DNA of 64,000 nt from positions 166,048 through 230,047 of the IMG/VR virus record IMGVR_UViG_3300042516_005475; one strand, 5' to 3'. Numbering within the stretch: the first letter of the stretch is position 1; every line of letters starts with the position of its first letter. A model generated the notes under the pieces. It was given only the letters and a program-made list of their open reading frames with translations. It did no database searches and was not told the origin of the DNA. A program made the translations under genes and the position numbers. Positions 4,019-42,260 of the stretch are shown here, piece by piece.

Positions 4019-4411
4019 ATGAGCTATTATCTCTTTTTGGACGATGAACGCTTCCCTCAAGATGTCACTTGGGTGAAGCTCCCACCCCACAACTGGACCA
4101 TTGTTCGCAACTATGCTGACTTTGTGCGAACCATTGAGAACAAAGGTTTGCCTGTGGAAATTGCCTTTGATCATGACTTGGGACACGAGCATTATCAGGC
4201 CTATCATGCCGCTGCTAAGCCTGGACATGGAGTCATTGATTACAGCAGCTTCAAGGAGAAGACTGGTCTCGACTGCGCCAAGTGGCTCATTGAACATTGT
4301 AACGAGAAGAATTTGCCGTTCCCCAAGTATTATGTTCACTCCATGAACCCCATTGGCAAGCAGAATATCATCAACGCTGTCAATTCCTTCAAAAGATATT
4401 TGCAAAAGTAG
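4019..4411 (+). CDS. cyclic-phosphate-processing receiver (cREC-type REC) domain protein
   Basis: LFLDDER.P, IAFDHDLG, TGLDCAKWL, VHSMNPIG motifs of this stand-alone receiver family. Confidence 0.8.
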   Translation: MSYYLFLDDERFPQDVTWVKLPPHNWTIVRNYADFVRTIENKGLPVEIAFDHDLGHEHYQAYHAAAKPGHGVIDYSSFKEKTGLDCAKWLIEHCNEKNLPFPKYYVHSMNPIGKQNIINAVNSFKRYLQK

Positions 4412-4440
4412 TGGCGTTCCTTCAAAAAAGCAGCCATAAT
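4411..4440 (+). promoter_or_regulatory. early-type promoter driving the ncRNA cluster
   Basis: gtggcg-ttcc...-CATAAT followed by GATTGTAGAAAAT, matching promoters at 26128, 27200 and 27485. Confidence 0.65.
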
Positions 4441-4554
4441 GATTGTAGAAAATTTAGAACGGTAGTAACGTTCAACAGGTGCTGACAATACGTAGAAAAA
4501 GATAGTGTTGGCTAAGTGCGAGTTGTAGTGCCTCCAGCCTGTGTTCTTTTCAAT

Positions 4555-4873
4555 GCGATCGTAGCTCAACGGTAGAGCATCGGCCTTTAATAGGAGCGCT
4601 TATAGAGTGATCTATAAGATGAACCGAGCCATATGCGGGGACCTCCTTAGAGCCTTGAGTACCGTAAGGTAAAAATCTCAAGGATTGGACAATCCGCAGG
4701 AAACCAGTAGATTAGTACGCTGTTGGTCATAAATTGGGATCCTCAGAGACTTTACGCTTGGCATCTCTAAAAGAGATGATGATAAAGTCCAGACTACAAC
4801 GGAAACGGCTAGTGAAAACTAGAGTAGTAAGTTAAGCCGGGTGTTGTGGATTCGAATTCCACCGGTCGCACCA
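4555..4873 (+). tRNA. trnK: tRNA-Lys(UUU) interrupted by a group I intron; exons 4555-4587 and 4832-4873
   Basis: Acceptor GCGATCG/CGGTCGC, D arm GCTC/GAGC, anticodon stem TCGGC/GCCGG, spliced loop CT-TTT-AA, T arm GTGGA-TTCGAAT-TCCAC, encoded ACCA end. Confidence 0.9.
4588..4831 (+). ncRNA. group I intron, 244 nt, no ORF (IC3-like)
   Basis: P ATGCGGGGAC 4633, Q AATCCGCAGG 4691, R CCTCAGAGACTTTA 4741, S GATGATAAAGTCC 4778; P7 GACTTTA/TAAAGTC; P3 CCGAGC/GCTTGG; P1 CTT/GAG; terminal G 4831. Confidence 0.92.
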
Positions 4874-4972
4874 TATTTGCCAACAGGGCTCAGCTTGATG
4901 CTTTGGACAGATAACAAAGTCTGATAGAGAGGCTAGTGCAGAAAATCCTGTATAAACTGCACATTAATTTTT

Positions 4973-5047
4973 CGGCAAGAGTCCTGATCAGACATGGTAA
5001 AGTGCCTGCAGAGGGCACGAGGCAGGTTCAAGTCCTCCATCTTGCCG
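4973..5047 (+). ncRNA. tRNA-like structured RNA without a normal anticodon arm
   Basis: CGGCAAG/CTTGCCG stem, TGGTAAA D-loop-like segment, GTGCCT/GGGCAC hairpin, AGG-TTCAAGT-CCT T-arm. Confidence 0.6.
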
Positions 5048-5070
5048 TTCAATTTAGTTCTTTTACATTT

Positions 5071-5162
5071 GAGTTGGAGCTGTATCCGCAAGGACAGCAT
5101 GGTGTTAGTGAAAGCATTGGAAATGCAGTCTTTCACCGGACTACGACGGTTCCATCCAACTC
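5071..5162 (+). ncRNA. structured RNA with the same architecture as 4973-5047
   Basis: GAGTTGG/CCAACTC, GCAA-tetraloop hairpin, ATGG/CCAT, GTGAAAG/CTTTCAC. Confidence 0.55.
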
Positions 5163-5169
5163 TTTAAAT

Positions 5170-5311
5170 TTATCTGTAGCTCAGCGGTAAGAGCAGAGTT
5201 CCTAACTATGGGTAAAGCCCTTAAAAATCTTATGTTAGGTCGTAAAATTGCCTTGTACTGATATTTTACAAGTTGTAAAAGTAGCCGTTGGTTCGATTCC
5301 AACCAGATGAA
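5170..5311 (+). ncRNA. tRNA-like RNA with a ~90 nt structured segment replacing the anticodon/variable region
   Basis: Acceptor TTATCTG/CAGATGA, TA-GCTC-AGCGGTAA-GAGC D arm, GTTGG-TTCGATT-CCAAC T arm; middle has CCTAAC/GTTAGG and CTTGTA/TACAAG. Confidence 0.7.
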
Positions 5312-5406
5312 CAATTACGCCCGGAGAATACCCGATAAATAGGACACTTAATTTGGTTCCCCATCAGAGGATTAAAACGCCAATTAAAAGACCGGCGACA
5401 ATTTTA

Positions 5407-5539
5407 TGCCAGGAGAGCGCGAGTAATACGCCTTCAGCTAGATGTAGTAATTAGCGTCTAGCAACGAGAAGAACAAAGGAAACCGAAGTAATTACCGGCT
5501 AACCTTTTATAGGTGGATAAAGAACCACCCCTGACACCA
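5407..5539 (+). ncRNA. CCA-ending tRNA-like RNA
   Basis: TGCCAGG/CCTGACA (one mismatch) then CCA; GGTGG/CCACC hairpin in T-arm position; internal GCTAGATG/CGTCTAGC stem. Confidence 0.45.
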
Positions 5540-5566
5540 ATTTAACAAGACAGATAGACGTGTAAG

Positions 5567-5621
5567 TAAGCTTTGGAAGCCACCCATAAGTGGGTGACTG
5601 GGTTCGATTCCCAGGAGCTTA
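5567..5621 (+). ncRNA. 55-nt minimal tRNA-like element
   Basis: TAAGCTT/GAGCTTA acceptor, TGGAAG linker, CACCCA-TAAG-TGGGTG hairpin, CTGGG-TTCGATT-CCCAG T arm; inside an AACAAG/CTTGTT outer stem (5544-5678). Confidence 0.6.
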
Positions 5622-5739
5622 TTAGGGAACAAACTGCCATCTCGACGAGAGAGCGTAGGTGAAATCCTGAAACTTGTTTCAAATTTTATTTGCAGTTCCT
5701 GTTACTTTCAGTTAAACTAAACGTAGTAAAAATAAAAAA

Positions 5740-6042
5740 ATGAACAAAGAAATCGTTAACATCGTTCGGGACCGCAAGGGTAATCCTCGTGGTTATGTTG
5801 TCGCTACTAAGCTCGAGAATGGTAAGGTTGGCCTTGGCTGGTCTTATGTTAATGTTAAGGCTGGAGATCGCTTCGACAAGTATCTCGGCCAAAAGATCGC
5901 CATGAATCGAGCCTTTACTGGTACTGATAAGTTTGTGCCTCGTGACGTGATGAAGGTGATTGATCGGGTGTCTTCTCGCGCTGTGAAGTACTTCAAGGCT
6001 CCTATTGATGCCTACCCTCAGCAAGTTGTTACTGTTGCGTAA
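5740..6042 (+). CDS. hypothetical early protein
   Basis: Downstream of TTGCAG-17-TAAACT promoter; GWSYVN...DRFDK.LG.KIA. Confidence 0.65.
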   Translation: MNKEIVNIVRDRKGNPRGYVVATKLENGKVGLGWSYVNVKAGDRFDKYLGQKIAMNRAFTGTDKFVPRDVMKVIDRVSSRAVKYFKAPIDAYPQQVVTVA

Positions 6043-6286: not shown

Positions 6287-7684
6287 ATGCCTGTTAACAG
6301 TAATGTAACAACTCCTAATTACCAAACTTTAGAGTATCAAAAGTTTGTCCAAATATATAATGATACTAGATTCCCTCCAATAACAAGTGTAAGATCTGAC
6401 TATTATAGCGGTACACAGATTGAGATATATGATAAGTATGCTGTATTAACTTTTGATATTGGGCAAAATGCAGCTCTAGGACCAGCTAATACGTTGCCGT
6501 TTGGAGATAATGCTGCTAGTGATGCCTTTGGTAGACTGAGAGTTTCTCTCCCATCTACCTTATTTAACTCTAAACAAAATAATGATAGTAATTCTTTACT
6601 CTATAGCACAGCAACTGTAAATACAGGTAGTTGGTATTTTGATAACAATAATGCCTGTACAGTCTTATCTGTTTCAGCAACAGGAGATGTTGCTATAAAG
6701 CAGTCAAAAAAGTATATGAATTATCAGCCTGGCAAATCCCAGCTGATATTCGAAACCTTTGTAATGCCTAACACAGCAGGCATAGTTAACAGAGTTGGTT
6801 TATTTGATAGCTCAACAACTTCTCCATATAGCAATAATATTGAGGGTTATTATTTTCAATGTAATAATGGAGTAAATTCTTTCCATATTGCTAATGTTGG
6901 TGACGAGCCAAGCCAAAGCGCTTTACAATCTGAATGGAACATAGACAAGCTTAACGGTACAGGTTTATCTGGTATAACATTAGATGTTACAAAAACCCAG
7001 ATTTTAGTAATAGATTACGAGTGGTTAGGGGTAGGGAGAGTTAGAATGGGGTTCTGTATTAATGGTATTATATTTTATTGTCATCAATTCGTTCATGCAA
7101 ATGAAGTCTCTCTTCCTTATCTCCAAGATCCAAACAAACCTATTAGATATGAAATTAGAAGCACAGGTGGAATAGGTTCATTAAAACAAATATGCGCTAG
7201 TGTTATGAGTGAAGGTGGAAGTGTTGATAACGCTATCCCGTTATCTATTGATACTGGGTTTGACAGTATTGGTAATATTTCAAGCAATACATTATGGCCA
7301 GCTATAACTGTTAGACTAAAAGATTCTTTTAAGAGTGTAGATATACAATTAAAAGACTTTGCTGCAATGGCTTTCTCAACTACTAATACTCTTGTAAGAG
7401 TAGTATCAAATGGTGTTATTTCTAATTCAGCAGCCTTTGTTGATATGAGCTCTGGGGCCTTGGAATATAGTATAGGCACTACTTCTACTACTCTTACTGG
7501 AGGTGTTATATTATTCAGCTCTTTTTTTAATAAGGCCAGCAATACTATTAGTCAATTAGGAGAGTCTTTATATAGTTTAGGTAGCAACATAAACGGCACC
7601 AAAGATACATTATCATTAGTATTAGTTCCATGTGGAGGAAATGAAAAGTATTTTGCTGCAATGAACTTCAAACAGTACCTATAA
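6287..7684 (+). CDS. putative virion structural protein (beta-rich)
   Basis: 465 aa S/T/N-rich; DAFGRLRVS, YQPGKSQL, DYEWLGVGRVRMGF; TAAATA 6276-6281. Confidence 0.6.
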   Translation: MPVNSNVTTPNYQTLEYQKFVQIYNDTRFPPITSVRSDYYSGTQIEIYDKYAVLTFDIGQNAALGPANTLPFGDNAASDAFGRLRVSLPSTLFNSKQNNDSNSLLYSTATVNTGSWYFDNNNACTVLSVSATGDVAIKQSKKYMNYQPGKSQLIFETFVMPNTAGIVNRVGLFDSSTTSPYSNNIEGYYFQCNNGVNSFHIANVGDEPSQSALQSEWNIDKLNGTGLSGITLDVTKTQILVIDYEWLGVGRVRMGFCINGIIFYCHQFVHANEVSLPYLQDPNKPIRYEIRSTGGIGSLKQICASVMSEGGSVDNAIPLSIDTGFDSIGNISSNTLWPAITVRLKDSFKSVDIQLKDFAAMAFSTTNTLVRVVSNGVISNSAAFVDMSSGALEYSIGTTSTTLTGGVILFSSFFNKASNTISQLGESLYSLGSNINGTKDTLSLVLVPCGGNEKYFAAMNFKQYL

Positions 7685-7729: not shown

Positions 7730-8746
7730 ATGGAACGTAAACTTGCTAGTGTTCGTAAGATTCAAGAAATTAAGCTCATCGAAGGTGCTGACAAGATTTG
7801 CGCCTACCGAGTTGATGGTTGGTGGGTTGTAGATAGTATTAATAAGTATAATGTTGGTGATCTTGTGGTCTACTACGAGATTGATAGCTTTCTACCAATC
7901 ACTCCTCAATTTGAGTTTCTCCGCAAGTCTTCATTCAAGAAGATGGGTGAACGTGAAGGCTTTAGGCTCAAGACTATTAAGCTCAAGGGCCAGCTCAGCC
8001 AAGGTCTCTTGACTAAAATTCCAATTGGTCTCATTGTACCTCCTAAGGAAAATGATGACATGACTGAGTTGCTCGGCATTATCAAGTATGAGCCTCCTAT
8101 TCCTGCTGAGCTAGCTGGTGAGATCAAGGGTTCGTTCCCTAGCTTCATCCCTAAGACTGATGAGGTTCGTATTCAGAACTTTGAAAGGGAAGTTGGGGTT
8201 TCTATCGCTAATGAGCGAGTTTACGCTACTGAGAAGGTTGATGGTACTAGCTTTACTTGTTATGTTAACAATGGTGAGTTTGGTGTTTGTGGTCGCAATT
8301 GGGAGTTGAAGGAGACTCAAGGTAACTCTCTTTGGCGAATGGCTAACAAGCTCAATCTTCGTGAGAAGCTCTTGAGTCTCAATCTTAACATTGCCTTGCA
8401 GGGTGAGTTGTTTGGTAGTGGAATTAATGGTAATTGGTACAAGCTCAATGATCACCGACTCATGTTCTTTACTGGATATGATATTGATAATCAAAAGCGA
8501 TTGCAGTTTAATGAGTTAATGAACTTGTTGGATAGTTTGCAGTTGGAAAGTGTTCCTGTTATTGATTATATTGCTACTATTCCAGATGGTACTATGGCTG
8601 AGATCGTTGAGTGGTCTTTGTTGTATGCTGAGTCTGAGAGTAATATTAATGCTGCTGTAGAGAACGAAGGTGTTGTTATTCGTGGTCTTGAGAAGGAGTT
8701 TAGCTTCAAGGCTATTAGTAACAAGTGGCTCCTTAGTGAAAAGTAA
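7730..8746 (+). CDS. RNA ligase (DRB0094/Rnl5-like, N-terminal OB domain)
   Basis: MERKLAS...IEGADKI OB domain; FIPKTDEVRIQN; TEKVDGTS; LQGELFG; EGVVIR; SFKAISNKWLL. Confidence 0.88.
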   Translation: MERKLASVRKIQEIKLIEGADKICAYRVDGWWVVDSINKYNVGDLVVYYEIDSFLPITPQFEFLRKSSFKKMGEREGFRLKTIKLKGQLSQGLLTKIPIGLIVPPKENDDMTELLGIIKYEPPIPAELAGEIKGSFPSFIPKTDEVRIQNFEREVGVSIANERVYATEKVDGTSFTCYVNNGEFGVCGRNWELKETQGNSLWRMANKLNLREKLLSLNLNIALQGELFGSGINGNWYKLNDHRLMFFTGYDIDNQKRLQFNELMNLLDSLQLESVPVIDYIATIPDGTMAEIVEWSLLYAESESNINAAVENEGVVIRGLEKEFSFKAISNKWLLSEK

Positions 8747-12649: not shown

Positions 12650-12812
12650 TAACCTCGTTAAAGGATATGAGAATACCATTGGTATGCTTAGGATTCAAAA
12701 CGAGCAATTGCGAATAGATTTAGACGAACTACGTAAAGAAAATCTATTGTTGAGAGTAGAATTGTCTGAAATAACTAAAAAGAGAAAGAAGAAGGTTTTG
12801 AGCTTCCATTGA
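12615..12812 (+). CDS. small coiled-coil protein
   Basis: Heptad pattern LRIQNEQLRIDLDELRKENLLL. Confidence 0.5.
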   Translation: MKHQIDTMTSINNLVKGYENTIGMLRIQNEQLRIDLDELRKENLLLRVELSEITKKRKKKVLSFH

Positions 12813-13069
12813 AGAATGCCTTGTTTCTTGACACATCTTGGTACGGAATAGATTTGTGTGCCAAAAGAATTCTGAATTTCTCTGGACTTTCCTCTGCAGG
12901 TCCTTCATAATCTCTTTAATGAATGAGATGCTTGATGCTCAGGATAGCCTCTACGATGTTGCTTTCGTCTCTGCAGAAGAGTATTATGAGGAAATGCAGC
13001 CGTTAGATTTAAACTAATTTTAAACTACGTTATTTGTATTTTATTTGTATTTAGATTAAATATAACTGT

Positions 13070-34255: not shown

Positions 34256-34657
34256 ATGAAACGTAATAACAAAGCTGGTTTTACTCTCGTTGAGCTGATG
34301 ATTAGTGTCGTTATCTTTTTCATCGTTATCTCAACCATTATTGGTATTAGTGGCATTATTATTGGCAAGAGCGACGGTAAGCGAGTTGGTACTATTACTA
34401 AATTCAGTCACAAGGGCTTGTTTGTTAAGAGCTACGAAGGCGAACTCAATATGGGTGGTTTTCGCGATCGTACTGACAGTGAAGGTAAGCATAGCGTTGT
34501 TGGCAACGTTTGGGAGTTTAGCTGCAGCAATCCTGAGGTTGCTAAGAAGTTGGATAATTTGCTTGGCAAGCAAGTCGTTATTCAGTATCATCAGAGCTTC
34601 AAAGGGTTCAAGATGGATACTAGCTATGATGTTGTTAGCGTAGAGGAAGTGAAATAA
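34256..34657 (+). CDS. prepilin-type N-terminal domain fused to an OB-like domain
   Basis: KAG|FTLVELMISVVIFFIV; G.RVG.ITKFSHKG..VKSYEGEL C-terminal domain. Confidence 0.75.
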   Translation: MKRNNKAGFTLVELMISVVIFFIVISTIIGISGIIIGKSDGKRVGTITKFSHKGLFVKSYEGELNMGGFRDRTDSEGKHSVVGNVWEFSCSNPEVAKKLDNLLGKQVVIQYHQSFKGFKMDTSYDVVSVEEVK

Positions 34658-37600
34658 ATGAGACTCAAAGAGACTGGCGAATACAAAGAGCCAATTAGTC
34701 TCAAGTATGGCCAGAGCTTGTTCGTAGATATGTGGGATAAGTATTACCTCTACGAAGAATGCTCTGGTACATCTTTTGACTTTAGATTGAATAGATACTT
34801 AGAAGATAGGTCTCGTAGTATAAATTACTTTAATTCTAACTATATTAAGATGATTATAAAATGGAATCGTTAAAGAATAAATTCTACAACGAGTTGGATC
34901 TTAAATTAAGTGCCAATTTAACTAATCGTATGGATAATAAGTTGGCAAATAATTTTTATGGTTATTTGCTAAACAAGCTCAATTATAGTTTGTATTGGCA
35001 GCTTGATTTAGTTTACTGTAATCGAATTGCTGACGAGATACACTTATCCTTAACAGATGAAAAATGAGGCTCAAAATATGTCTATTATTCTAATGTTAGA
35101 AGACAAGTTAGTAGAAAGAGTTCGTAAAGATGTTCTCAAAAAGAGTATCAAGATAGACCCAAAAGTTGACGATCTACTTTATATTAATTTGAGTAGATCT
35201 ATTGTATCGTTAGATATACAATTAAGCGATGAGTTGATGGGATGGTAGAGATACTATGAAAAACATGAAGGGTAAATCTATAAAAGGTAAAATGATAATG
35301 AGACAGATGGCTGTCAAAGATTCTTTCTTTAATAATATCTCTAAACAATTAGGTAGAGGGTACAAGTGGAAGATTTATATTGATTTTGGTAATGATTTGT
35401 TTATTATAGAAGAAGCTAGTGATGAGATACATAAGAGCCTTTCTATAGAAAACTACAAAAAGAAGCTATGAAGCCAATCAAGAAAAAATTATTTGCATTG
35501 TACTTAGATAACCGATTGTATCAGGTTTTAAGTACGCAAATGTTTTTTGATGTTCATTGGGATATTTCAGGAAAATTGTTTAATGATTTGCATGATAAAA
35601 TGTTAACGGTTAGTCAAAGAGTTGAAAATAGACTAGTCAAAGAGAGGCGAATAGGAGAAGTATGACATCCATTAAAGGCAAACTACTAGAGCCAGATAAT
35701 AATGCTCTCTATAGTCTCGATTTAATCTCTAAGATTAATAATTTGTACAATAATATTCCAAAACATATAGATGGCCTTTTTCTTTTTAGGCAGCTATCAT
35801 TGATGTTGTCAGAAGAAATTAACGATGGCTTAAAAGATGAAATCAAGAAAAGAAAACTCTCTAAAAGAAAAACTATTTAACAAACTGCGAATAAAATTAG
35901 AGAGTAATCTGCTCTCTACCGTCTGTTCTGATCCTATTATCATCGACAATTTCAAAATAATCAGGAGACATAATTTGAGGCTAGCAATTAGGATTCGCAA
36001 TAGTACACTTATACCATATGTATATAAAGAATAAAGAGTCTATAATTTGTGCATTAAATCCTGTTTTTATTTCTACTATATTGGGCAGAGCGTTGAATGT
36101 AAAAGTTGACTGTAAACTTATAAGTGCATTACACTTTGCCTTGTCTGAAGAGCTTTTAAGTAAAGTTAGGATTAATATTTCTCAAGGAATATCGGACGAA
36201 TTATATGAAGAAAAAAAGCAAATCAATTAGTAAAAAAATTCTCCTCAATCAATTTAAGTTTCAAGATCAATTAGAAAATACAAGGCAGAAGTACTTTCAT
36301 AAAGAATTACGTATAGACTTCGAGATAAGCCTTTATAATAGGTTATATGTTCAGCTGACTTATGACTACCTGTAAAGTAAACATTCGTAAAGTGCTTTTA
36401 AGTCAAGTTAAAAAGCTGAAGCTTAACCTTGAAATTAATACATCTAAACGATTAGATAATAGTTTATATTGGGATCTCACTAAAAGAGAGAACCACATGT
36501 ATATTATTTTTTATCTACGTCCCAAAGCCATTTACAATGAACAGCTTAAAAAAGATTTATATTGATTCACTTGAACAAAATTTATTTCGTAAGACACAAA
36601 ATACTCTTGATAGAAAGATTGTGTCTGAAATGATTAAAAATATTAATCTATCTTTAGTGTGGGCTGTGCATGATGAGCTATATATAAACCCAATTAAACG
36701 TGAAAATGTCTCTAAGATCAAAAATTAATCGCTCTCTGGCTAGTCCATGTACTGATGATAGATTTAAAGAACTAAACAAAATAAGCACTAAAATTATTGC
36801 CACTTTACATACTCAATTGTATAATAATATCCAACAAACATTAGATCATCAAATATTCGTGGGACTATTAGGTATAAAACATGACATCAACAAAGAATAA
36901 AATTGTTAGTAGCGTTAGTCTTCACCTTGACACTTGTTTGTATAAACAAACAAATCAAAAAGATTATTTAAAATTGGTTGGTACTTTAGACGATAATTTA
37001 CATGAATTGTTACTTAATCAAATGTGCCTAAAGATTCATAGCAAACTCTTGTTTAACAGAGAAAACTTTATATACCTAAACTTTGAGGTGTTCTAGCAAA
37101 TGTGCCTAGATCTTCATAACAAACTCTTATTTAACAGTGAAACCTATATACCTTAAACTTTGCGGCACTCTATCTAAGTACATTAACAAACATGTTACTC
37201 TAGATAGATATTATGTCAGCCCTTATTATGGCAGCCCTTATTTTATTACCAAATATGATATTTCAAATAGTTCTTATAAACAATTGAAACATAAATTTGA
37301 TGATGAACTATTCGATGTAACCTACAACAATATTAACAATGCCATTAAGAAAGAACTGCTTAAAACTATTCATCGCTAATATTTTTGAAAAGGTGAATCA
37401 TGACAACCTGAAGGATATTTGCCCTAAACTTCTCTCCGAAATTTTAGTTGACTATGAGGTCAAGGTAGCCCATAATATAGCCAATCACATAGAGTTAGCA
37501 ACCTTTAGCCATATTATTGAGGATCATGAACTCGTGCGCTGGTAAAGTATCAGTCAGAAAAGAAATTAATCGGGTGATATATAGTACTTACGCTATATCT

Positions 37601-40600
37601 AAGTTGACAAAATCAAAGAGAGATGTTATAGAATCAAAACTATTCTACAATACAGACTTACCCTACAATACTGTACATTGGCATTTATATCATGAGCTTA
37701 AGACAGGAAATTGAAATGAGAATGTTAGAGAGTAAGCGTAATATGTGTGCTCATTACACATTGAATGCTTTCTCAAATGCTAAGCCTAAAAACAAAATAG
37801 AGCAAAAAATATGGGGAGATAATTCTATTTCTGATCTTATTCAATTGCTAGAATACAATTTACGAGAACATCTATATGACTAAACAAAAAAGACAACCAG
37901 TAAATTTCTCTTGCTTCGATAACCTATACGTGACTTCTGAAAAGTTGTTGCTTAATTCTTTGTATTATACTTTAAATGATAACATTCAAATAAAGCTTTA
38001 TAATAACATATATAATAATTTTAATCGCAATTTAAGGACTCAACTAAAAAATGAAGGCTATCGCTCGTAAATTAACTTTTTTAAATGGGACCCCTTATCG
38101 AGTTAAATGTGGTAAGAAGTTGTTCTATTATTTAGAATTAATATTTCATAAAAAATTAGGACAAGAATCTGTGAGTAGAATTAATGTACAATTAGTAAAT
38201 GAATTACTAAACAATGAAAAGCGTTAAAATTCTAATTATAACTAATGCATTTTTTCATGCTAGTATTAGAAATGCTGTCGTCTCTAAATTAAAAGATGAA
38301 GCTATATCAGATCTAGAAGTTAAAATGTGGACTGACCTATATGGATTAATATGGTCTAATGTTTATGAACCTTTAAGCAGTGAACTCAATAAAAACTGAA
38401 ATAACTAATAAAGTACTTTATCATTGGAGTATAAAGTATAATAAGATTCTCTCATCTGATGCTCTCATTAGTTATTGGAGAAATAATCCATTTGCCTTTG
38501 TTAACGATGCCTTGTTCGTTGGCTTAAATGATAAACAAAATGAAGAAATCTGATAACATCAAGAAACAACTACAAGGGTTTAAAGACACAATCTACAAGG
38601 TCTACTACATGAAACAAACATCTTCTTTCAATAGGTGTATTGACTTATATGGTGAACTCAGCCATAATCTTAACAGCAATTTAACTAATCACACTGAGAG
38701 GCAATTAAAAAATGAAAGAAGAAACGCACATTTTAAAACTGGAAAAAGAGCGCAGAAGGCTCTATACTAGAATAAACAATAGCTGTGGAGTAGTTACAGC
38801 TATGTTGCAAACACCCTTTTATTATAAAGAGCTCTATCAACCAATAGAATTTGCAATGATCATAGAGAATGAATTAGAAAATGAAATCGATTAGACTAAA
38901 AATGATAGTTAAAATGCACTTCAGCAGAGATACTCGAATTAAAATTACTCCTGAAACTGTAGAAAAACTATACAACCCCTTATGGGCTAATCTACAAGTT
39001 AACATCTCACGAAATTTAGCCAATAAATTGATATTCAAAAATATTTTAGAAGACTATGAAAAATAAAGAGGTTCTCCATAAAATGAATGAGCAACGCAAT
39101 TGGGCTATTGGTAGATGCAATCCTATTATTGATAAAATTATTAACCGAGAGATTTTACTAAATAGTTTTGTAGATTTTAGTTTTCAAATGCGGTCGCTTA
39201 ATGTTAATGTAATGAGAGATTTGTTAAATGAAACCTAAAACCCTCAGATTTAAAATACAAGATCAAATCAATGATAGCTTCTGTACTACCCGAACTCTGG
39301 GCAGAAACGATAAGTGGGAAGAATTAGATAGTACTTTGTTATTTTTCTTATATTATGAGTTAGAGCATATTATTCAGCATTCTTTATCAGAGGAGTTAAA
39401 TGAAGCCAAAATATCTTAGACACAAAATAAACGAGAAATTACATGCTCATCGTTTTAGAATCATTTTACATGAGCAAATAATAGATTTGTCTAGGCAAGA
39501 TTTATATAGAAAGTTAGCTAACCCATTGTATGATAATAGCCTTGAGGATACAATAGGGTGGGAATTGAGAAAACAAATAAAGAATGAAATCAAAAAACAT
39601 TAGACAAAAAATACAAGAGAACTTATTTGATCTTCGTTTTAGAATTGCCTTACAAGAGCAAATAATAGACTTGCTTAAAGATCAATTAATTAAAAAGTTA
39701 GCTAATCCATTGTATACTAATAGCCTTGAGGATATAATAGACTCTGAACTTAGAAAACAAATACTGAATGAAGCCAATTAAAACTAGTTTAAACGTACTT
39801 TATCTTTACCATTCATTGACAGAATTGAGTACTATTGTTCGTAACAAGTTATCCAATGAGCTTTATCACCCTTTATTTGTTAATATTGATAGGGGCATTA
39901 GCATGATAAAGAGGAGAGAACTTAAAAAATGAAGCCAATTAAAGATAAACTTAGAGAAAAGCTATTCTATAACTGTTATTATAGATTTAGCAATGAGTAC
40001 TATAAAAAGGTATCGTATGGATGCTATGTTAGGGTGTCAGGCAAACTAAACATTGAACTCAAAGAAAAATGTGATGAGGTAAATTATCAAGTAAGTGAAC
40101 AATTACTCTGGAGCAATGAAAACAAAAAGAAACTTATATTTTAACATATCCAATAAGGCAGTAGTTATGGGTCAAAAATTACACCTCAGTGTGAGTAAAC
40201 AAACTAACTTAGAATACTTTCAACCAGTTGAAGTTAAACTAAATTGTGCTTTGCATAAAAACTTAGAGGCTCAATTGTTCTACGTTATAAAAGACTCATT
40301 AGTTCATCATAAAACAATTTCAACATAAATGAAACCTTTAACTAAAGAAATACATTCAAAATTGATTTGTAAATTAGAAACAAAATTGAATAGACCATAT
40401 TATAGTAACCTAAAAAACGAGCCAAGATGGAAACTACAAAATGCATTTAATGTTGTTTATAATGACCTAGACCAAATAAACAAAAGGTTAGAACACTTCT
40501 GAATGCTTATAATATTATCTATGACTTTAATCACTCATAAAATAATGGAAAGGCTAGTGAGCAAAATGGAAATGAATCTGTATAGAGCCATGTATTACTC

Positions 40601-40927
40601 TCTCAAAAACAAATGTTACACTCGCTTTCAAAACCAATTCAACTCCGAATTGTATCACCTTATACACAATAGATTAAACTTCTCCATTAGGAGCAACTTA
40701 AGAGAAGAATGAAACCATTAACAGTTAGCATAATTAATAAACTATACAATGAATTGGAAACTAATTTGTATAATGCCTTGTATTGGAACACTAAAGCTAA
40801 TGCATATACCGCTTTACAATCAAGACTCTTTGCTGGGTTATATATCGAGTTGAATAATAGATTAAACGAAACTGTTGATAATAACCTCTTTGATGAGCAA
40901 TTAAAACTTCATAACCATACCAATTAA
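34658..40927 (+). other. tandem array of 30+ translationally coupled ~55-80 aa helical mini-genes
   Basis: Continuous overlapping ORFs, many starting MK(P/S)(I/L)K.K(L/I), with L..xLYxxL periodicity and ATGA-type overlaps. Confidence 0.7.
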
Positions 40928-40965
40928 AGGAAGATTAGTTAAGAGAGGCATATTAAATAACCTAT

Positions 40966-42260
40966 ATGTCTCTTAAACCATTAAAGACTAAAGAGCGATT
41001 AGATGCCTTGAAGAACAATCCAAAGGCATTATTAGCTTTTTGCAAAGATGTATTAAAGGCTCCATGGCCAGAGGCTGAACCATACATCTTAAAAGATACT
41101 ATGGTTGCTATGCATTATGCCTATCATGTTAAACAGAAGCTATGGCCTGAGTTAGAAAATATACTAGATGGTACTAGATATATGCCAATGTATAACTGGA
41201 ACATGAGATATTTTACCTATTAATATGCCTCTTAAATCAATCAAACTAAAAGATAGATTACAAAAGAAAAAGAAAGATCCTTTTGAAATCATTAATTTTT
41301 GCAGATACACTATAATGGGTCGCTGGCCAGAAGTTGAACCTTTTTTACTAAAACATAAAGATCCTTTTTGGGCATTGTTATATGCCAGAGACATCATCAA
41401 AGGGCGATGGCCAGAAGCAGAACCTCTTATCATGAAAGAGGCATACATGGCATACAAGTACGCTAGAGATGTAATCAAAGGACCTTGGCCTGAAGCCGAG
41501 AAACATATTAAACGAGATGCTGCTGCCTGGAGCGAATATACAAAAAAGGTACTAAACAACTCATAACATATGCCCCTAAAACCAATAAAGACTAAAGAGA
41601 GATTTGAAAATCTTATAAAAACTCCTAGAGGTGTTGTTACATATGCTGAGCATAAAAAAACGCCTGTACCTGATCTTGAGCATGTAATATTACTAGATGA
41701 CTTGGCAATCTATTGGTATGCCTATTATGTTTTACACCGCAGATGGCCAAAGGGAGAACAGATATTGTTGAGAGGAGCTTTTCCTATATGGGGACCAAAT
41801 GCCTATGTTCTAAGCAGATATGCAGAAAATATAATAAAAAATCGTTGGCCAGAGGCTGAACCATTTATTAAAAAAGATTCATCAGAATGGGAAAATTACT
41901 CAAACAACTTTAACATTCAAGACTAATATGCCCCTCAAACCAATAAAGACTAAAGAAAGATTAGAACAAGTAAAGAAAGATGCAGGATTAGCATATTATT
42001 TTGCTAAAGATGTAATCAAGGATCGTTGGCCAGAAGTTGAACCTATTATTATGCAGGATGCCTGGTGGGCATGGAAGTATGCTGTAGACGTTATTAGAGC
42101 ACCATGGCCAGAGGCTGAACATGTTATCTCTAAAAAATCTATGCCTGCTTATAATTATGCTGTATTGGTAATAAAAGATAAATGGCCACCTGGAGAAAAA
42201 GCTATTAATAAATTAGCCTACTCCAAAAAAGGATATAAACATTTTGTAGACAATTTATAA
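40966..42260 (+). CDS. four tandem WPEAEP helical-repeat genes (40966, 41225, 41570, 41928)
   Basis: M(P/S)LK(P/S)(I/L)K.K(E/D)R N-termini, RWPEAEP.I repeats, TAAATA 40954-40959. Confidence 0.75.

What the first reader, a model, noticed from the sequence alone, without database searches (positions are those of the whole stretch)
4441..5680. 1.25 kb polycistronic cluster of tRNA mimics, candidate new RNA system
Seen: from the promoter at 4411-4440 to the next at 5690 there is no credible ORF but about nine self-contained stem-closed units separated by short AT-rich spacers (about 4467-4548, tRNA-Lys, 4883-4962, 4973-5047, 5071-5162, 5170-5311, 5319-5397, 5407-5539, 5544-5678). Three besides tRNA-Lys keep a TTC(G/A)A T-loop but lack a usable anticodon. 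Known: T4 has two tRNA-like stable RNAs (rnaC/rnaD) in its tRNA cluster. Inference: decoys for tRNA-targeting defences or for tRNA-binding sensors, released by RNase P/Z-type processing.
Basis: partly seen in the sequence, partly recalled or inferred. Interest (0 to 1): 0.85.

Follow-up and report, generated by a model that had tools for sequence, protein, structure and literature searches.

The report
Phage tRNA operon of tRNA-like RNAs
A jumbo phage has a 1.25 kb non-coding operon holding one real lysine tRNA gene split by a self-splicing intron plus eight folded small RNAs, several of them tRNA look-alikes with no anticodon. These RNAs are swapped like cassettes among related phages and sit next to RNA-repair genes.

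Summary
Window 4414-5690 is a promoter-headed stretch with no conserved ORF, made of stem-closed RNA units separated by short AT-rich spacers.

- The 'tRNA-Lys' unit is tRNA-Lys(UUU) interrupted inside its anticodon by a 244-nt group I intron (4588-4831; Rfam 70.9 bits). Relatives carry the same gene without the intron. Three other phage tRNA-Lys genes carry other group I introns.
- Units u4, u6 and u9 keep the acceptor stem and T arm but have no anticodon. Units u1, u5, u6, u8 and the u9 core keep their folds through compensatory changes. u7 has two such changes in its only homolog, u4 two, and u3 is untested.
- The units behave as cassettes. About 14 RNA families come, go and reorder among roughly 20 related metagenomic loci, and some recur in two other phage lineages.

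The cluster lies between a cREC gene (predicted cyclic-phosphate esterase) and an RNA ligase.

The closest known analogues are T4's rnaC and rnaD, whose roles are still unknown. None of the small-RNA units reaches the threshold of a non-tRNA Rfam family.

Verdict: a real feature, and a new, much expanded variant of a known kind.

The parts
4414..4453 (+). Phage promoter (GGCGTTCCT, 13 nt, CATAAT) and conserved transcript leader
   Evidence: The GTTCCT...CATAAT motif recurs in front of ORFs. The -10 plus leader 19-mer occurs 5 times against 0.16 expected. It is conserved in relatives L005, L007, L018, L020, L021 and L029.
4457..4542 (+). u1: leader hairpin (4457-4473) followed by a stem-closed branched domain (4475-4542)
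   Evidence: Consensus fold of 7 homologs has 5 pairs with compensatory changes. The single-sequence z-score is not significant. The unit is absent as a block in L006.
4555..4587 (+). tRNA-Lys(UUU) 5' exon, ending at U34
   Evidence: ARAGORN in intron mode. This stretch is contiguous with 4832 onward in intron-less relatives. Intron-less orthologs score 69-75 bits with the Rfam tRNA model.
4588..4831 (+). Group I self-splicing intron, 244 nt, no ORF, ending in G4831
   Evidence: Rfam RF00028 scores 70.9 bits against a gathering score of 50, E = 5.6e-16. The stretch is exactly absent from L006, L007-L010, L013, L015 and others. Its core is 82-83% identical over about 70 nt to sequences in Acinetobacter and Pseudomonas phage genomes.
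4832..4873 (+). tRNA-Lys(UUU) 3' exon with encoded CCA (4871-4873)
4881..4965 (+). u3: small RNA unit with an uncertain fold
   Evidence: The only homolog is in another phage contig (L035 133-225, minus strand, 88% identity), again placed just before u4. z-score is -0.75. In the closest relative L029 this slot holds tRNA-Lys(CUU).
4973..5047 (+). u4: tRNA-like RNA with an 8-bp acceptor-type stem, a GG-containing D-loop-like segment, a central hairpin with a variable loop, and a T arm (GGUUCAAGUCC). No anticodon.
   Evidence: tRNA-Sec model only 16.7 bits. The central loop sequence differs among homologs.
5071..5162 (+). u5: stem-closed multi-helix RNA, not tRNA-like at its 3' side
   Evidence: z-score -3.3. 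Five pairs show compensatory changes, and 0 of 500 shuffles reach the covariation score. It also occurs in the unrelated phage contig L036 at 90% identity.
5170..5311 (+). u6: tRNA-derived RNA. The acceptor stem, full D arm and T arm are kept. The anticodon arm is replaced by about 86 nt forming a conserved hairpin and a variable hairpin.
   Evidence: Rfam tRNA model scores 36.4 bits against a gathering score of 29, with an 86-nt insert. Ten pairs show compensatory changes, 0 of 500 shuffles. ARAGORN's anticodon call changes among orthologs (Pyl, Val, Arg, Thr, Gly), so there is no real anticodon.
5319..5397 (+). u7: stem-closed unit. It shares its 5' 24 nt and its closing stem with a different unit (u7b) in relatives.
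   Evidence: Against its one homolog, L019, there are two compensatory changes. z-score is -0.33.
5407..5539 (+). u8: 133-nt RNA with an acceptor-type closing stem, three internal hairpins, a T-arm-like hairpin stacked on the 3' strand, and an encoded NCCA end
   Evidence: z-score -3.9. With the 73%-identical copy in L036, seven pairs show compensatory changes, 0 of 500 shuffles.
5544..5680 (+). u9: outer stem enclosing a 57-nt mini tRNA-like core (5566-5622: acceptor stem, GG linker, hairpin, T arm) and a 3' hairpin domain
   Evidence: z-score -2.5. The core consensus fold has T-stem and acceptor covariation. mascRNA model scores 20.5 bits, below threshold. The core is missing as a block in L013 and L014.
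5692..5739 (+). Next promoter (GCAGTTCCT ... TAAACT) and leader of the downstream ORF
   Evidence: It is conserved in all relatives.
4019..4411 (+). cREC_REC protein (predicted cyclic-phosphate-processing enzyme), directly upstream
   Evidence: Pfam PF20274, E = 2.8e-23. The published prediction and its linkage to RNA ligases are in PMC7824862. An operon of ligase, cREC and a P-loop kinase is seen in L026.
5740..6042 (+). 100-aa ORF always found directly downstream of the RNA cluster; function unknown
   Evidence: 93-98% amino-acid identity among relatives whose RNA clusters differ. No Pfam or PHROG hit. The structure model (mean pLDDT 85.6) has only weak matches.
7730..8746 (+). RNA ligase (PHA02142 OB-fold domain plus RNA_ligase domain)
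   Evidence: Pfam E = 9e-33 and 1e-22; PHROG 968.

Best explanation
**What it is.** This is a phage tRNA-type operon, transcribed from one of the phage's own recurring promoters as a single precursor of about 1.25 kb.

**What it yields.**
- A functional tRNA-Lys(UUU), produced once a group I intron inserted between U34 and U35 of the anticodon splices itself out.
- Eight structured small RNAs.
  - Three of them (u4, u6 and the u9 core) keep the tRNA 'top half and elbow': an acceptor stem stacked on a T arm with a GGUUCRAxUCC loop, and a GG-containing D-loop element. They have no anticodon.
  - u8 keeps an acceptor-type stem stacked on a T-arm-like hairpin whose loop is not a T-loop. It also encodes a CCA end.

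**How the RNAs are released (inferred).** These features are what RNase P, 3'-end trimming enzymes and the CCA-adding enzyme recognise. The units are therefore most likely cut out and stabilised by the host tRNA maturation machinery, as T4 rnaC and rnaD are.

**What it does (inferred).**
- The operon is an accessory module for maintaining translation and countering defence.
- tRNA-Lys(UUU), the one constant member, replaces a host tRNA that several defence nucleases cut.
- The adjacent cREC and RNA ligase repair cut RNA.
- The anticodon-less mimics are exchangeable ligands that occupy or mislead host factors binding the tRNA body.

**Shown versus inferred.** The anatomy, structural conservation, cassette behaviour and gene context are shown here. 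Processing, stability and the counter-defence role are inferred.
For: **Promoter.** The promoter and leader recur in front of ORFs.

**tRNA-Lys and its intron.**
- define the exons and the intron.
- Intron-less orthologs score 69-75 bits with the Rfam tRNA model.

**tRNA-like anatomy and covariation.** u6, u4, the u9 core, u8, u5, u1, u7.

**Not a known family.** None of the small-RNA units reaches the threshold of any non-tRNA Rfam family.

**Cassette behaviour.**
- tRNA-Lys(UUU) is present in every locus that covers the start of the cluster. The other units vary.
- u3, u4, u5, u8 and u9 recur in two other phage contigs with different flanking genes and promoters.

**Analogue.** T4 rnaC shows the same design. 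Its role is still unknown (PMC3014915).

**Context.**
- cREC and RNA ligase flank the cluster. L026 has a ligase, cREC and kinase operon. The published prediction is that cRec resolves 2',3'-cyclic ends for RNA ligases (PMC7824862).
- Papers listed or read report that phage tRNAs counter tRNA-targeting defences (PMC10264068, PMC11464382, PMC11555353). A bacterial Schlafen nuclease cuts tRNA-Lys(UUU) most strongly (PMC13056530, read).
- That PrrC and PARIS target tRNA-Lys is my own knowledge; I did not read it in those texts.
Against: - There are no expression, end-mapping or stability data, and the host is unknown.
- u3 is supported only by one 88%-identical homolog. u1, u3 and u7 do not fold better than shuffled sequence.
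- No unit carries an anticodon-loop mimic, so a decoy role against anticodon nucleases lacks a structural basis.
- In this phage the P-loop kinase that accompanies the ligase and cREC elsewhere is reduced to a 33-codon remnant. The repair module may therefore be incomplete.
- In L007-L010 two genes separate cREC from the cluster. The linkage to cREC is not strict.
- High cassette turnover would also fit weakly selected or selfish elements.
Confidence: 0.6

Rival explanations
1. **Processing punctuation or relics.** The units are tRNA-derived leftovers, possibly including remnants of intron-split tRNAs. They persist mainly because their acceptor and T-arm helices direct cleavage of the precursor and protect the one useful product, tRNA-Lys. 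They would have no trans-acting role of their own.
For: - u6's D-arm region is 95% identical to that of tRNA-Lys over 19 nt (L032 copy), and its foreign insert sits where anticodon-loop introns insert in these phages.
- Units are gained and lost freely between close relatives.
- L021 and L033 function with only u1, tRNA-Lys and one u4-like unit.
Against: - The non-tRNA inserts are the most conserved parts. About 55 nt of the u6 insert is almost invariant across homologs that are 78-99% identical overall.
- Helices with no processing role (u5, the internal u8 hairpins) are kept by compensatory changes.
- The same cassettes are kept after transfer into unrelated phage backgrounds.
Confidence: 0.2
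2. **Partner RNAs for the adjacent RNA-repair enzymes.** The tRNA-like RNAs would be scaffolds or cofactors for cREC and the RNA ligase, or for the conserved 100-aa protein. This would resemble bacterial Y RNAs (YrlA), which work with Ro/Rsr beside RtcB.
For: - The cluster lies between cREC and the RNA ligase and always directly upstream of a highly conserved small protein.
- u9 has a closing stem plus an internal tRNA-like domain, loosely like YrlA.
- Some jumbo phages carry Ro/TROVE proteins that have a tRNA-like partner RNA (PMC7824862).
Against: - There is no Rfam Y-RNA or YrlA match.
- No TROVE protein was found among the 20 window proteins scanned.
- u6, u4 and u8 have their ends at the acceptor stem rather than the permuted YrlA topology.
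- The 100-aa protein shows no RNA-binding fold.
- L036 carries the cassettes, but no ligase or cREC was found among the six of its ORFs that were scanned.
Confidence: 0.08
3. **Base-pairing regulatory sRNAs.** The tRNA-like ends would only provide processing and stability. Conserved single-stranded loops would pair with phage or host mRNAs.
For: The invariant single-stranded 10-mer AAAAUCUUAU in u6 is complementary over 7 nt to AUAAGAU. That motif lies just upstream of the AUG in three copies of the phage's recurrent leader (14647, 27240, 27525).
Against: - The match is only 7 nt and was found after the fact.
- The two perfect 10-nt complements, on the minus strand at 41607 and 44940, are not in obvious translation-start contexts.
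- No similar candidate was seen for the other units.
Confidence: 0.06
4. **One large ornate RNA or small protein-coding genes.** The region would be a single structured RNA of the GOLLD/ROOL type found near phage tRNAs, or it would encode small proteins.
For: - GOLLD and ROOL RNAs lie next to tRNA genes in phages (my own knowledge).
- ORFs of 57-84 codons exist in the region.
Against: - There is no Rfam match to GOLLD or ROOL.
- Units are independently present, absent, reordered and transferred, which rules out one long fold and breaks every ORF.
- Substitutions are compensatory in stems.
Confidence: 0.03

Closest known systems
Phage T4 stable RNAs rnaC (species 1) and rnaD (species 2) in the tRNA gene cluster
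   Same: - They are small stable non-coding RNAs encoded inside a phage tRNA operon.
- T4 rnaC has a canonical T arm (CCGGG UUCGAAU CCCGG) followed by an acceptor-type 3' strand, with long hairpins where the D and anticodon arms would be. u4, u6 and u9 have the same design.
- A homing endonuclease gene (segB) sits in the T4 cluster. A 265-aa ORF that looked endonuclease-like to me but has no Pfam hit interrupts a unit in relative L019.
- The role of the T4 RNAs is still unknown (PMC3014915).
   Different: - No sequence similarity to T4 was found.
- This window has eight such units against T4's two, drawn from a pool of about 14 families that vary between close relatives and cross phage lineages.
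- The cluster holds only one true tRNA, against eight in T4.
- It lies beside cREC and an RNA ligase.
Bacterial group I introns in tRNA anticodon loops (cyanobacterial and plastid tRNA-Leu(UAA), tRNA-fMet, Azoarcus tRNA-Ile, Agrobacterium tRNA-Arg)
   Same: - It is a small group I intron without an ORF, inserted in the anticodon loop.
- It sits after position 34, as in tRNA-Leu(UAA) (that comparison is my own knowledge).
- The 5' exon ends in U and the intron ends in G.
   Different: - The host gene is a phage tRNA-Lys.
- A 2014 review states that all phage group I introns then known were in protein-coding genes despite the many phage tRNA genes (PMC3984707). My literature searches found no later solid case.
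- The intron core resembles sequences in other phage genomes. One lies between an HNH endonuclease gene and a terminase gene.
Phage tRNAs and RNA repair as counter-defence (T4 Pnkp and Rnl1 against PrrC; T5 tRNA-Lys against PARIS; phage tRNA-Tyr against retron effectors)
   Same: The phage carries its own tRNA-Lys(UUU), a favoured target of defence nucleases, together with end-healing and sealing enzymes.
   Different: - Nothing here shows that the tRNA resists cleavage. Its anticodon loop is the standard CUUUUAA.
- The known systems contain no anticodon-less mimics.
- The kinase component is a remnant in this phage.
tRNA-like RNAs released by tRNA-processing enzymes (mascRNA from MALAT1, MHV68 TMERs, bacterial YrlA)
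   Same: - The u9 core is a 57-nt element with an acceptor stem, a hairpin and a T arm, embedded in a longer RNA. The mascRNA model aligns to it end to end.
- Release by RNase P and RNase Z is the expected route.
   Different: - The score is below threshold (20.5 bits against 42.5).
- The element is bacterial-viral in origin, with no homology to those RNAs.
- No Ro/Rsr partner was found.

Membership tests
Canonical decoding tRNA (Rfam RF00005) | Cloverleaf with acceptor, D, anticodon and T arms and a 7-nt anticodon loop: joined exons 4555-4587 plus 4832-4873 | tested here: met
   ARAGORN draws a 75-nt tRNA-Lys(UUU) with the loop CUUUUAA and an encoded CCA. Intron-less orthologs score 69-75 bits.
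Canonical decoding tRNA (Rfam RF00005) | Anticodon arm present and conserved: u6 (5170-5311) | tested here: not met
   The model score of 36.4 bits comes from the acceptor, D and T arms only, and 86 nt replace the 17-nt anticodon arm. No 3' strand can pair with the 5' strand. ARAGORN's anticodon differs among orthologs.
Canonical decoding tRNA (Rfam RF00005) | Model score above gathering threshold: u4 and the u9 core | tested here: not met
   The best clan hits are tRNA-Sec at 16.7 bits (u4) and a tmRNA T-arm fragment at 12.5 bits (u9).
Amber-suppressor tRNA(CUA) with intron (ARAGORN's 'tRNA-Pyl' call for u6) | The same anticodon and a splice-competent intron are conserved in orthologs | tested here: not met
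   Orthologs are called Val, Arg, Thr or Gly, with different 'introns'. The window shows no sign of TAG recoding.
Group I intron (Rfam RF00028) | Covariance-model score above the gathering threshold across the whole core | tested here: met
   70.9 bits against 50, covering model positions 1-253.
Group I intron (Rfam RF00028) | 5' exon ends in U, intron ends in G, and removal restores the host gene | tested here: met
   The boundaries are U4587 and G4831. Relatives have exactly the joined sequence.
Group I intron (Rfam RF00028) | Guanosine-dependent self-splicing | not testable with these tools
   This needs an in vitro splicing assay.
T4 rnaC/rnaD-type stable RNAs of phage tRNA operons | Encoded within a phage tRNA operon; T arm and acceptor without an anticodon | tested here: met
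   u4, u6 and u9, compared with T4 rnaC.
T4 rnaC/rnaD-type stable RNAs of phage tRNA operons | Sequence homology to rnaC or rnaD | tested here: not met
   blastn of 4400-5720 against 50,697 phage records matched only the intron core.
T4 rnaC/rnaD-type stable RNAs of phage tRNA operons | Accumulates as a discrete stable RNA, processed by RNase P | not testable with these tools
   This needs RNA-seq or Northern blots and RNase P assays.
Bacterial Y RNA (YrlA) with Ro/Rsr | Family model match; Ro/TROVE protein encoded nearby; ends at the stem opposite the tRNA-like domain | tested here: not met
   No Rfam hit at E up to 10. No TROVE domain in the 20 window proteins scanned, though the rest of the 230-kb genome was not examined. 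Only u9 loosely has the topology.
tmRNA | tRNA-like domain plus a conserved tag reading frame | tested here: not met
   Only the T arm matches (12.5 bits). Reading the sequences by eye, a 17-codon frame in the window's u6 insert is not kept in L005 or L006 (sequences).
GOLLD / ROOL large phage RNAs | Family model match; one large conserved fold | tested here: not met
   No Rfam match. The units vary independently.

The most novel reading that the evidence does not exclude
Freshwater jumbo phages keep a hypervariable 'RNA island': an exchangeable library of anticodon-less tRNA mimics and other folded RNAs. These would act as RNA-based anti-defence cassettes, as decoys or inhibitors for immune effectors and sensors that grip the tRNA body (acceptor end, T arm, elbow). 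They travel with an intron-guarded tRNA-Lys and an RNA-repair module. This would also give a function, at last, to the T4 rnaC/rnaD class.
Probability: 0.2. Interest if true: 0.85.

Novelty: new variant of a known kind. Interest (0 to 1): 0.66.

Why it matters
- **An old open question becomes testable.** Phage tRNA clusters have been known for 50 years to hold tRNA-like stable RNAs (T4 rnaC and rnaD) whose role is still unknown. This locus shows the class can expand to eight units per genome, drawn from about 14 families. The folds are kept by compensatory changes and the units move between phage lineages. That pattern argues they do something, and it supplies many natural variants for tests.
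- **The context suggests an experiment.** The position beside cREC and an RNA ligase, and the constant company of tRNA-Lys(UUU), a frequent target of defence nucleases, point to tests against tRNA-directed defences.
- **Group I introns in phage tRNA genes.** There are four here, in three phage lineages, all in tRNA-Lys anticodon loops. This contradicts the published generalisation that phage group I introns sit only in protein-coding genes.
- **Annotation.** Standard tRNA finders miss these genes entirely.

Tried and rejected
**Readings considered and rejected**
- **Stop-codon recoding with a suppressor tRNA.** ORF lengths under TAG, TGA or TAA reassignment give no sign of recoding. The CUA 'anticodon' of u6 is not conserved.
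- **tmRNA-like tag in u6.** A 17-codon frame in the window copy is not kept in relatives (my reading of the sequences).
- **Known ribozymes, riboswitches, Y RNA, GOLLD or ROOL.** No Rfam hits.
- **A TROVE/Ro partner.** None found in the window proteins scanned.
- **The 100-aa downstream protein as an RNA-binding partner.** The model is confident, but the only matches are a weak one to the anti-CBASS sponge Acb4 (E = 0.1) and uncharacterised phage proteins. Nothing can be concluded.
- **A GTAGTAA loop motif.** There are four + strand copies in the cluster, but the motif is not enriched window-wide (15 found against 11 expected) and is not conserved in u1 homologs.
- **A GTTCTTTWA spacer motif.** Not enriched in the window.
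- **u6 loop pairing with mRNA leaders.** Only 7 nt, found after the fact.

**Searches that found nothing useful**
- **Homologs in cultured phages.** Only the intron core matched.
- **Pattern scans.** The u6 18-mer hit a coding region by chance (L011). The u5 pattern in 185,579 prokaryotic genomes hit only a metabolic gene in a Flavipsychrobacter MAG (L037). No bacterial copy and no host clue resulted.
- **Distant cREC contexts.** L026-L028 have ordinary tRNAs or none, and none of these units.
Full report
**Origin and layout**

The window is the last 64 kb of a 230-kb viral contig, IMGVR_UViG_3300042516_005475. The flagged region lies between two genes.
- Upstream is a cREC_REC gene (4019-4411; Pfam PF20274, E = 2.8e-23).
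- Downstream is a conserved 100-aa ORF (5740-6042).
- An RNA ligase follows further downstream at 7730-8746.
- The region has 44% G+C, against about 36% around it.

**Check of the observation**

They belong to a phage-specific type, GTTCCT, then 12-14 nt, then CATAAT or TAAACT, followed by a conserved leader.
- This type recurs upstream of many ORFs.
- The 19-mer CATAATGATTGYAGAAAAT occurs five times on the + strand against 0.16 expected.

*ORFs.* The ORFs of 57-84 codons in the region cross units that are independently present or absent in relatives. They are not conserved genes.

Folding z-scores are clearly negative for u8, u5, u9 and u4, modest for u6, and null for u1, u3 and u7.

**The tRNA-Lys gene is split by a group I intron**

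- Default ARAGORN finds no tRNA in the window.
- Rfam finds a group I intron at 4577-4812 (70.9 bits, gathering score 50) and a tRNA match with an 86-nt insert at 5170-5311.
- ARAGORN in intron mode assembles tRNA-Lys(UUU) from 4555-4587 and 4832-4873, with a 244-nt intron.
- Relatives prove the boundaries. In L006 and L007-L010, window 4409-4588 and 4832-4880 are contiguous. Their intron-less tRNA-Lys genes score 69-75 bits.
- The 3' exon can contribute only two U residues after the terminal G. The intron therefore lies between U34 and U35. The 5' exon ends in U4587 and the intron ends in G4831.

Other phage tRNA-Lys genes in the set are also split.

| Locus | Gene | Insert | Rfam group I score |
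|---|---|---|---|
| L020 | tRNA-Lys(UUU) | 390 nt, one position away by my reading of the sequence | 23.5 bits |
| L035 | tRNA-Lys(UUU) | 272 nt | 41 bits |
| L035 | tRNA-Lys(CUU) | 417 nt | 26.6 bits |

These three scores are below Rfam's gathering score of 50. They were significant only in searches restricted to one or two loci.

A 2014 review states that all phage group I introns then known were in protein-coding genes (PMC3984707). My searches found no later solid case. The one claim found is a self-declared possible artefact. The window intron's core is 82-83% identical over about 70 nt to sequences in Acinetobacter and Pseudomonas phage genomes. One of these lies between an HNH endonuclease gene and a terminase gene.

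**The other units**

I collected homologs through two proteins that flank the cluster. The cREC gene gave L005-L010. The downstream ORF gave L013-L024 and L029-L034.

- **u6.** It keeps a 7-bp acceptor stem, a full D arm and a T arm. Where the anticodon arm should be there is a conserved hairpin with an inner mini-hairpin, then a linker, then a hairpin whose sequence varies. Ten of 32 pairs show compensatory changes, no shuffle reaches the covariation score, and slid controls collapse. No 3' strand exists for an anticodon stem, and ARAGORN's anticodon differs in every ortholog group. u6 is therefore a tRNA-derived RNA that cannot decode.
- **u4.** It has an 8-bp acceptor-type stem, an invariant GG-containing segment, a hairpin whose loop varies, and a T arm.
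- **u9.** An outer stem encloses a 57-nt core made of an acceptor stem, a GG linker, a hairpin and a T arm. T-stem and acceptor covariation includes a diverged copy in L036. The core is missing as a block in L013.
- **u8.** It has an acceptor-type stem, three internal hairpins, a T-arm-like hairpin stacked on the 3' strand, and an encoded NCCA. The 73%-identical L036 copy gives seven compensatory pairs.
- **u5.** This is a stem-closed multi-helix RNA with five compensatory pairs.
- **u1.** It has five compensatory pairs.
- **u7.** It shows two compensatory changes against its only homolog. It shares its 5' part with a different unit, u7b.
- **u3.** Its single homolog is in L035, and its fold is untested.

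Rfam assigns none of these small-RNA units to a non-tRNA family.

**Cassette behaviour**

Across the loci the cluster is a mosaic.
- tRNA-Lys(UUU) is present in every locus that covers the start of the cluster.
- tRNA-Lys(CUU) and tRNA-Thr(AGU) come and go. So do u1, u3, u4, u5, u6, u7, u7b, u8 and u9, and units absent from the window (uX, uY, uZ, uV, uW, uT). They also change order.
- The closest syntenic relative, L029, has tRNA-Lys(CUU) where the window has u3. It lacks u5 and the intron, and carries u7b instead of u7.
- Boundaries fall in short AT-rich spacers. Many have the form N-CAATTT (read from the sequences).
- Two other viral contigs with different neighbours share cassettes, and L036 at least uses a different promoter type. 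L035 has u3, u4 and uX. L036 has u5, u8, uV, uT and u9.
- No copy was found in cultured phage genomes. The one pattern scanned, from u5, found no copy in 185,579 prokaryotic genomes.

**Interpretation**

*Shown here:*
- a promoter-headed non-coding operon;
- one intron-split but otherwise canonical tRNA-Lys;
- a set of structured RNAs under selection for their folds;
- three of them (u4, u6, the u9 core) keeping the tRNA top half and elbow without an anticodon, and u8 keeping an acceptor-type stem and a T-arm-like hairpin;
- cassette-like turnover and transfer between phage lineages;
- adjacency to predicted RNA-repair genes.

*Inferred from established knowledge of tRNA maturation:*
- The acceptor and T-arm helices make the units substrates for RNase P and 3'-end processing.
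- This would release discrete stable RNAs.

*T4 parallel:*
- T4 rnaC shows the same architecture.
- Its role is unknown (PMC3014915).

*Inferred from context:* a role in maintaining translation or countering defence.
- cRec is predicted to open 2',3'-cyclic ends for RNA ligases (PMC7824862).
- A ligase, cREC and kinase operon occurs in L026.
- Phage tRNAs are reported to counter tRNA-targeting defences (PMC10264068, PMC11464382, PMC11555353).
- A bacterial Schlafen nuclease cuts tRNA-Lys(UUU) most strongly (PMC13056530).

*Weak points:*
- No unit imitates an anticodon loop. If the units are decoys, the targets must be factors that recognise the tRNA body or the 3' end. That step is speculation.
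- The kinase of the repair set is only a 33-codon remnant in this phage.

**Rivals**

| Reading | My confidence | Main evidence against |
|---|---|---|
| Units are processing punctuation or tRNA and intron relics | about 0.2 | Strong conservation of the non-tRNA inserts; retention after transfer between lineages |
| Y-RNA-like partners of the repair enzymes | about 0.08 | No model match, no TROVE protein found, wrong topology for most units |
| Base-pairing regulatory sRNAs | about 0.06 | Rests only on a 7-nt match found after the fact |
| One large RNA, or coding ORFs | about 0.03 | Excluded by the independent variation of the units |

**Verdict**

In kind it belongs with the T4 tRNA-region stable RNAs. 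It goes beyond what is known in four respects:
- its scale;
- its cassette dynamics and spread across phage lineages;
- its linkage to RNA-repair genes;
- the group I introns in phage tRNA genes.

I rate it a new variant of a known kind, with interest 0.66.

Noticed in passing
L020 185-650; L035 2077-2423 (minus strand) and L035 370-873 (minus strand): Three more phage tRNA-Lys genes (two UUU, one CUU) are split in the anticodon loop by other group I introns. Their Rfam scores are 23.5, 41 and 26.6 bits, all below the gathering score of 50. The L020 intron and the L035 CUU intron share long stretches that are 94-99% identical. tRNA-Lys looks like a homing hot spot in these phages.
   Followed up: partly
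window 12809-12910: Only a 33-codon C-terminal remnant remains of the P-loop kinase that relatives encode downstream of the ligase (L005 14295-14729). It is 81% identical over residues 108-144. The heal-and-seal repair set may be incomplete in this phage.
   Followed up: partly
window 5740-6042: This 100-aa ORF always lies directly downstream of the RNA cluster and is 93-98% identical among relatives whose clusters differ. The family is tiny, with 15 clusters. The confident structure model (three strands, two helices) has only a weak match to the phage anti-CBASS sponge Acb4 (E = 0.1) and to uncharacterised phage proteins.
   Followed up: partly
window 20879, 26120, 27205, 27490 (+ strand): In several copies of the recurring promoter, the GGTTCCT element is one arm of an inverted repeat (GGTTCCT..AGGAACC) placed just before CATAAT. 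This may be an operator. The RNA-cluster promoter lacks the second arm.
   Followed up: no
L019 229-1026 (minus strand): A 265-aa cysteine-rich ORF lies in an AT-rich insertion of about 700 nt that replaces most of the tRNA-like unit uY. To me its C-terminal part looks endonuclease-like, but it has no Pfam hit. It resembles the position of segB in the T4 tRNA cluster.
   Followed up: partly
window 6287-7684: A 465-aa virion structural protein gene (PHROG 1645) lies between the conserved small ORFs and the RNA ligase here, and also in L029 and L030. It is absent from that position in L005, L006 and L032.
   Followed up: no
window 5421-5427, 5446-5453, 5486-5494: Three hairpin loops of u8 carry the same AGUAAU(U)A motif. 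The u1 leader hairpin loop is GUAGUAA. The motif is partly kept in the diverged L036 copy and may be a shared binding site.
   Followed up: partly
L015 766-862: This copy of u8 has lost 41 nt between two direct repeats of GTAGTAATTA. It shows how these units are remodelled by short-repeat recombination.
   Followed up: no
window 34650-41160: About 6.5 kb of low G+C sequence (29-33%) has no ORF of 120 codons or more under any stop-codon reassignment tried. It may hold many small genes or more non-coding sequence.
   Followed up: no
L001 777-852 (about 1.2 kb upstream of window position 1): A separate, standard tRNA-Met(CAU) gene lies just outside the window. The equivalent gene is at L005 2445-2519.
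   Followed up: no
L036 7669-7815 and 8418-8560; L032 1-130: A further family of tRNA-like RNAs of about 140 nt (uT) has an 8-bp acceptor stem, a T arm and a large insert. It is present twice in L036, where the RNA stretches are interrupted by small ORFs and each begins after a TTGAC-type promoter-like sequence.
   Followed up: partly
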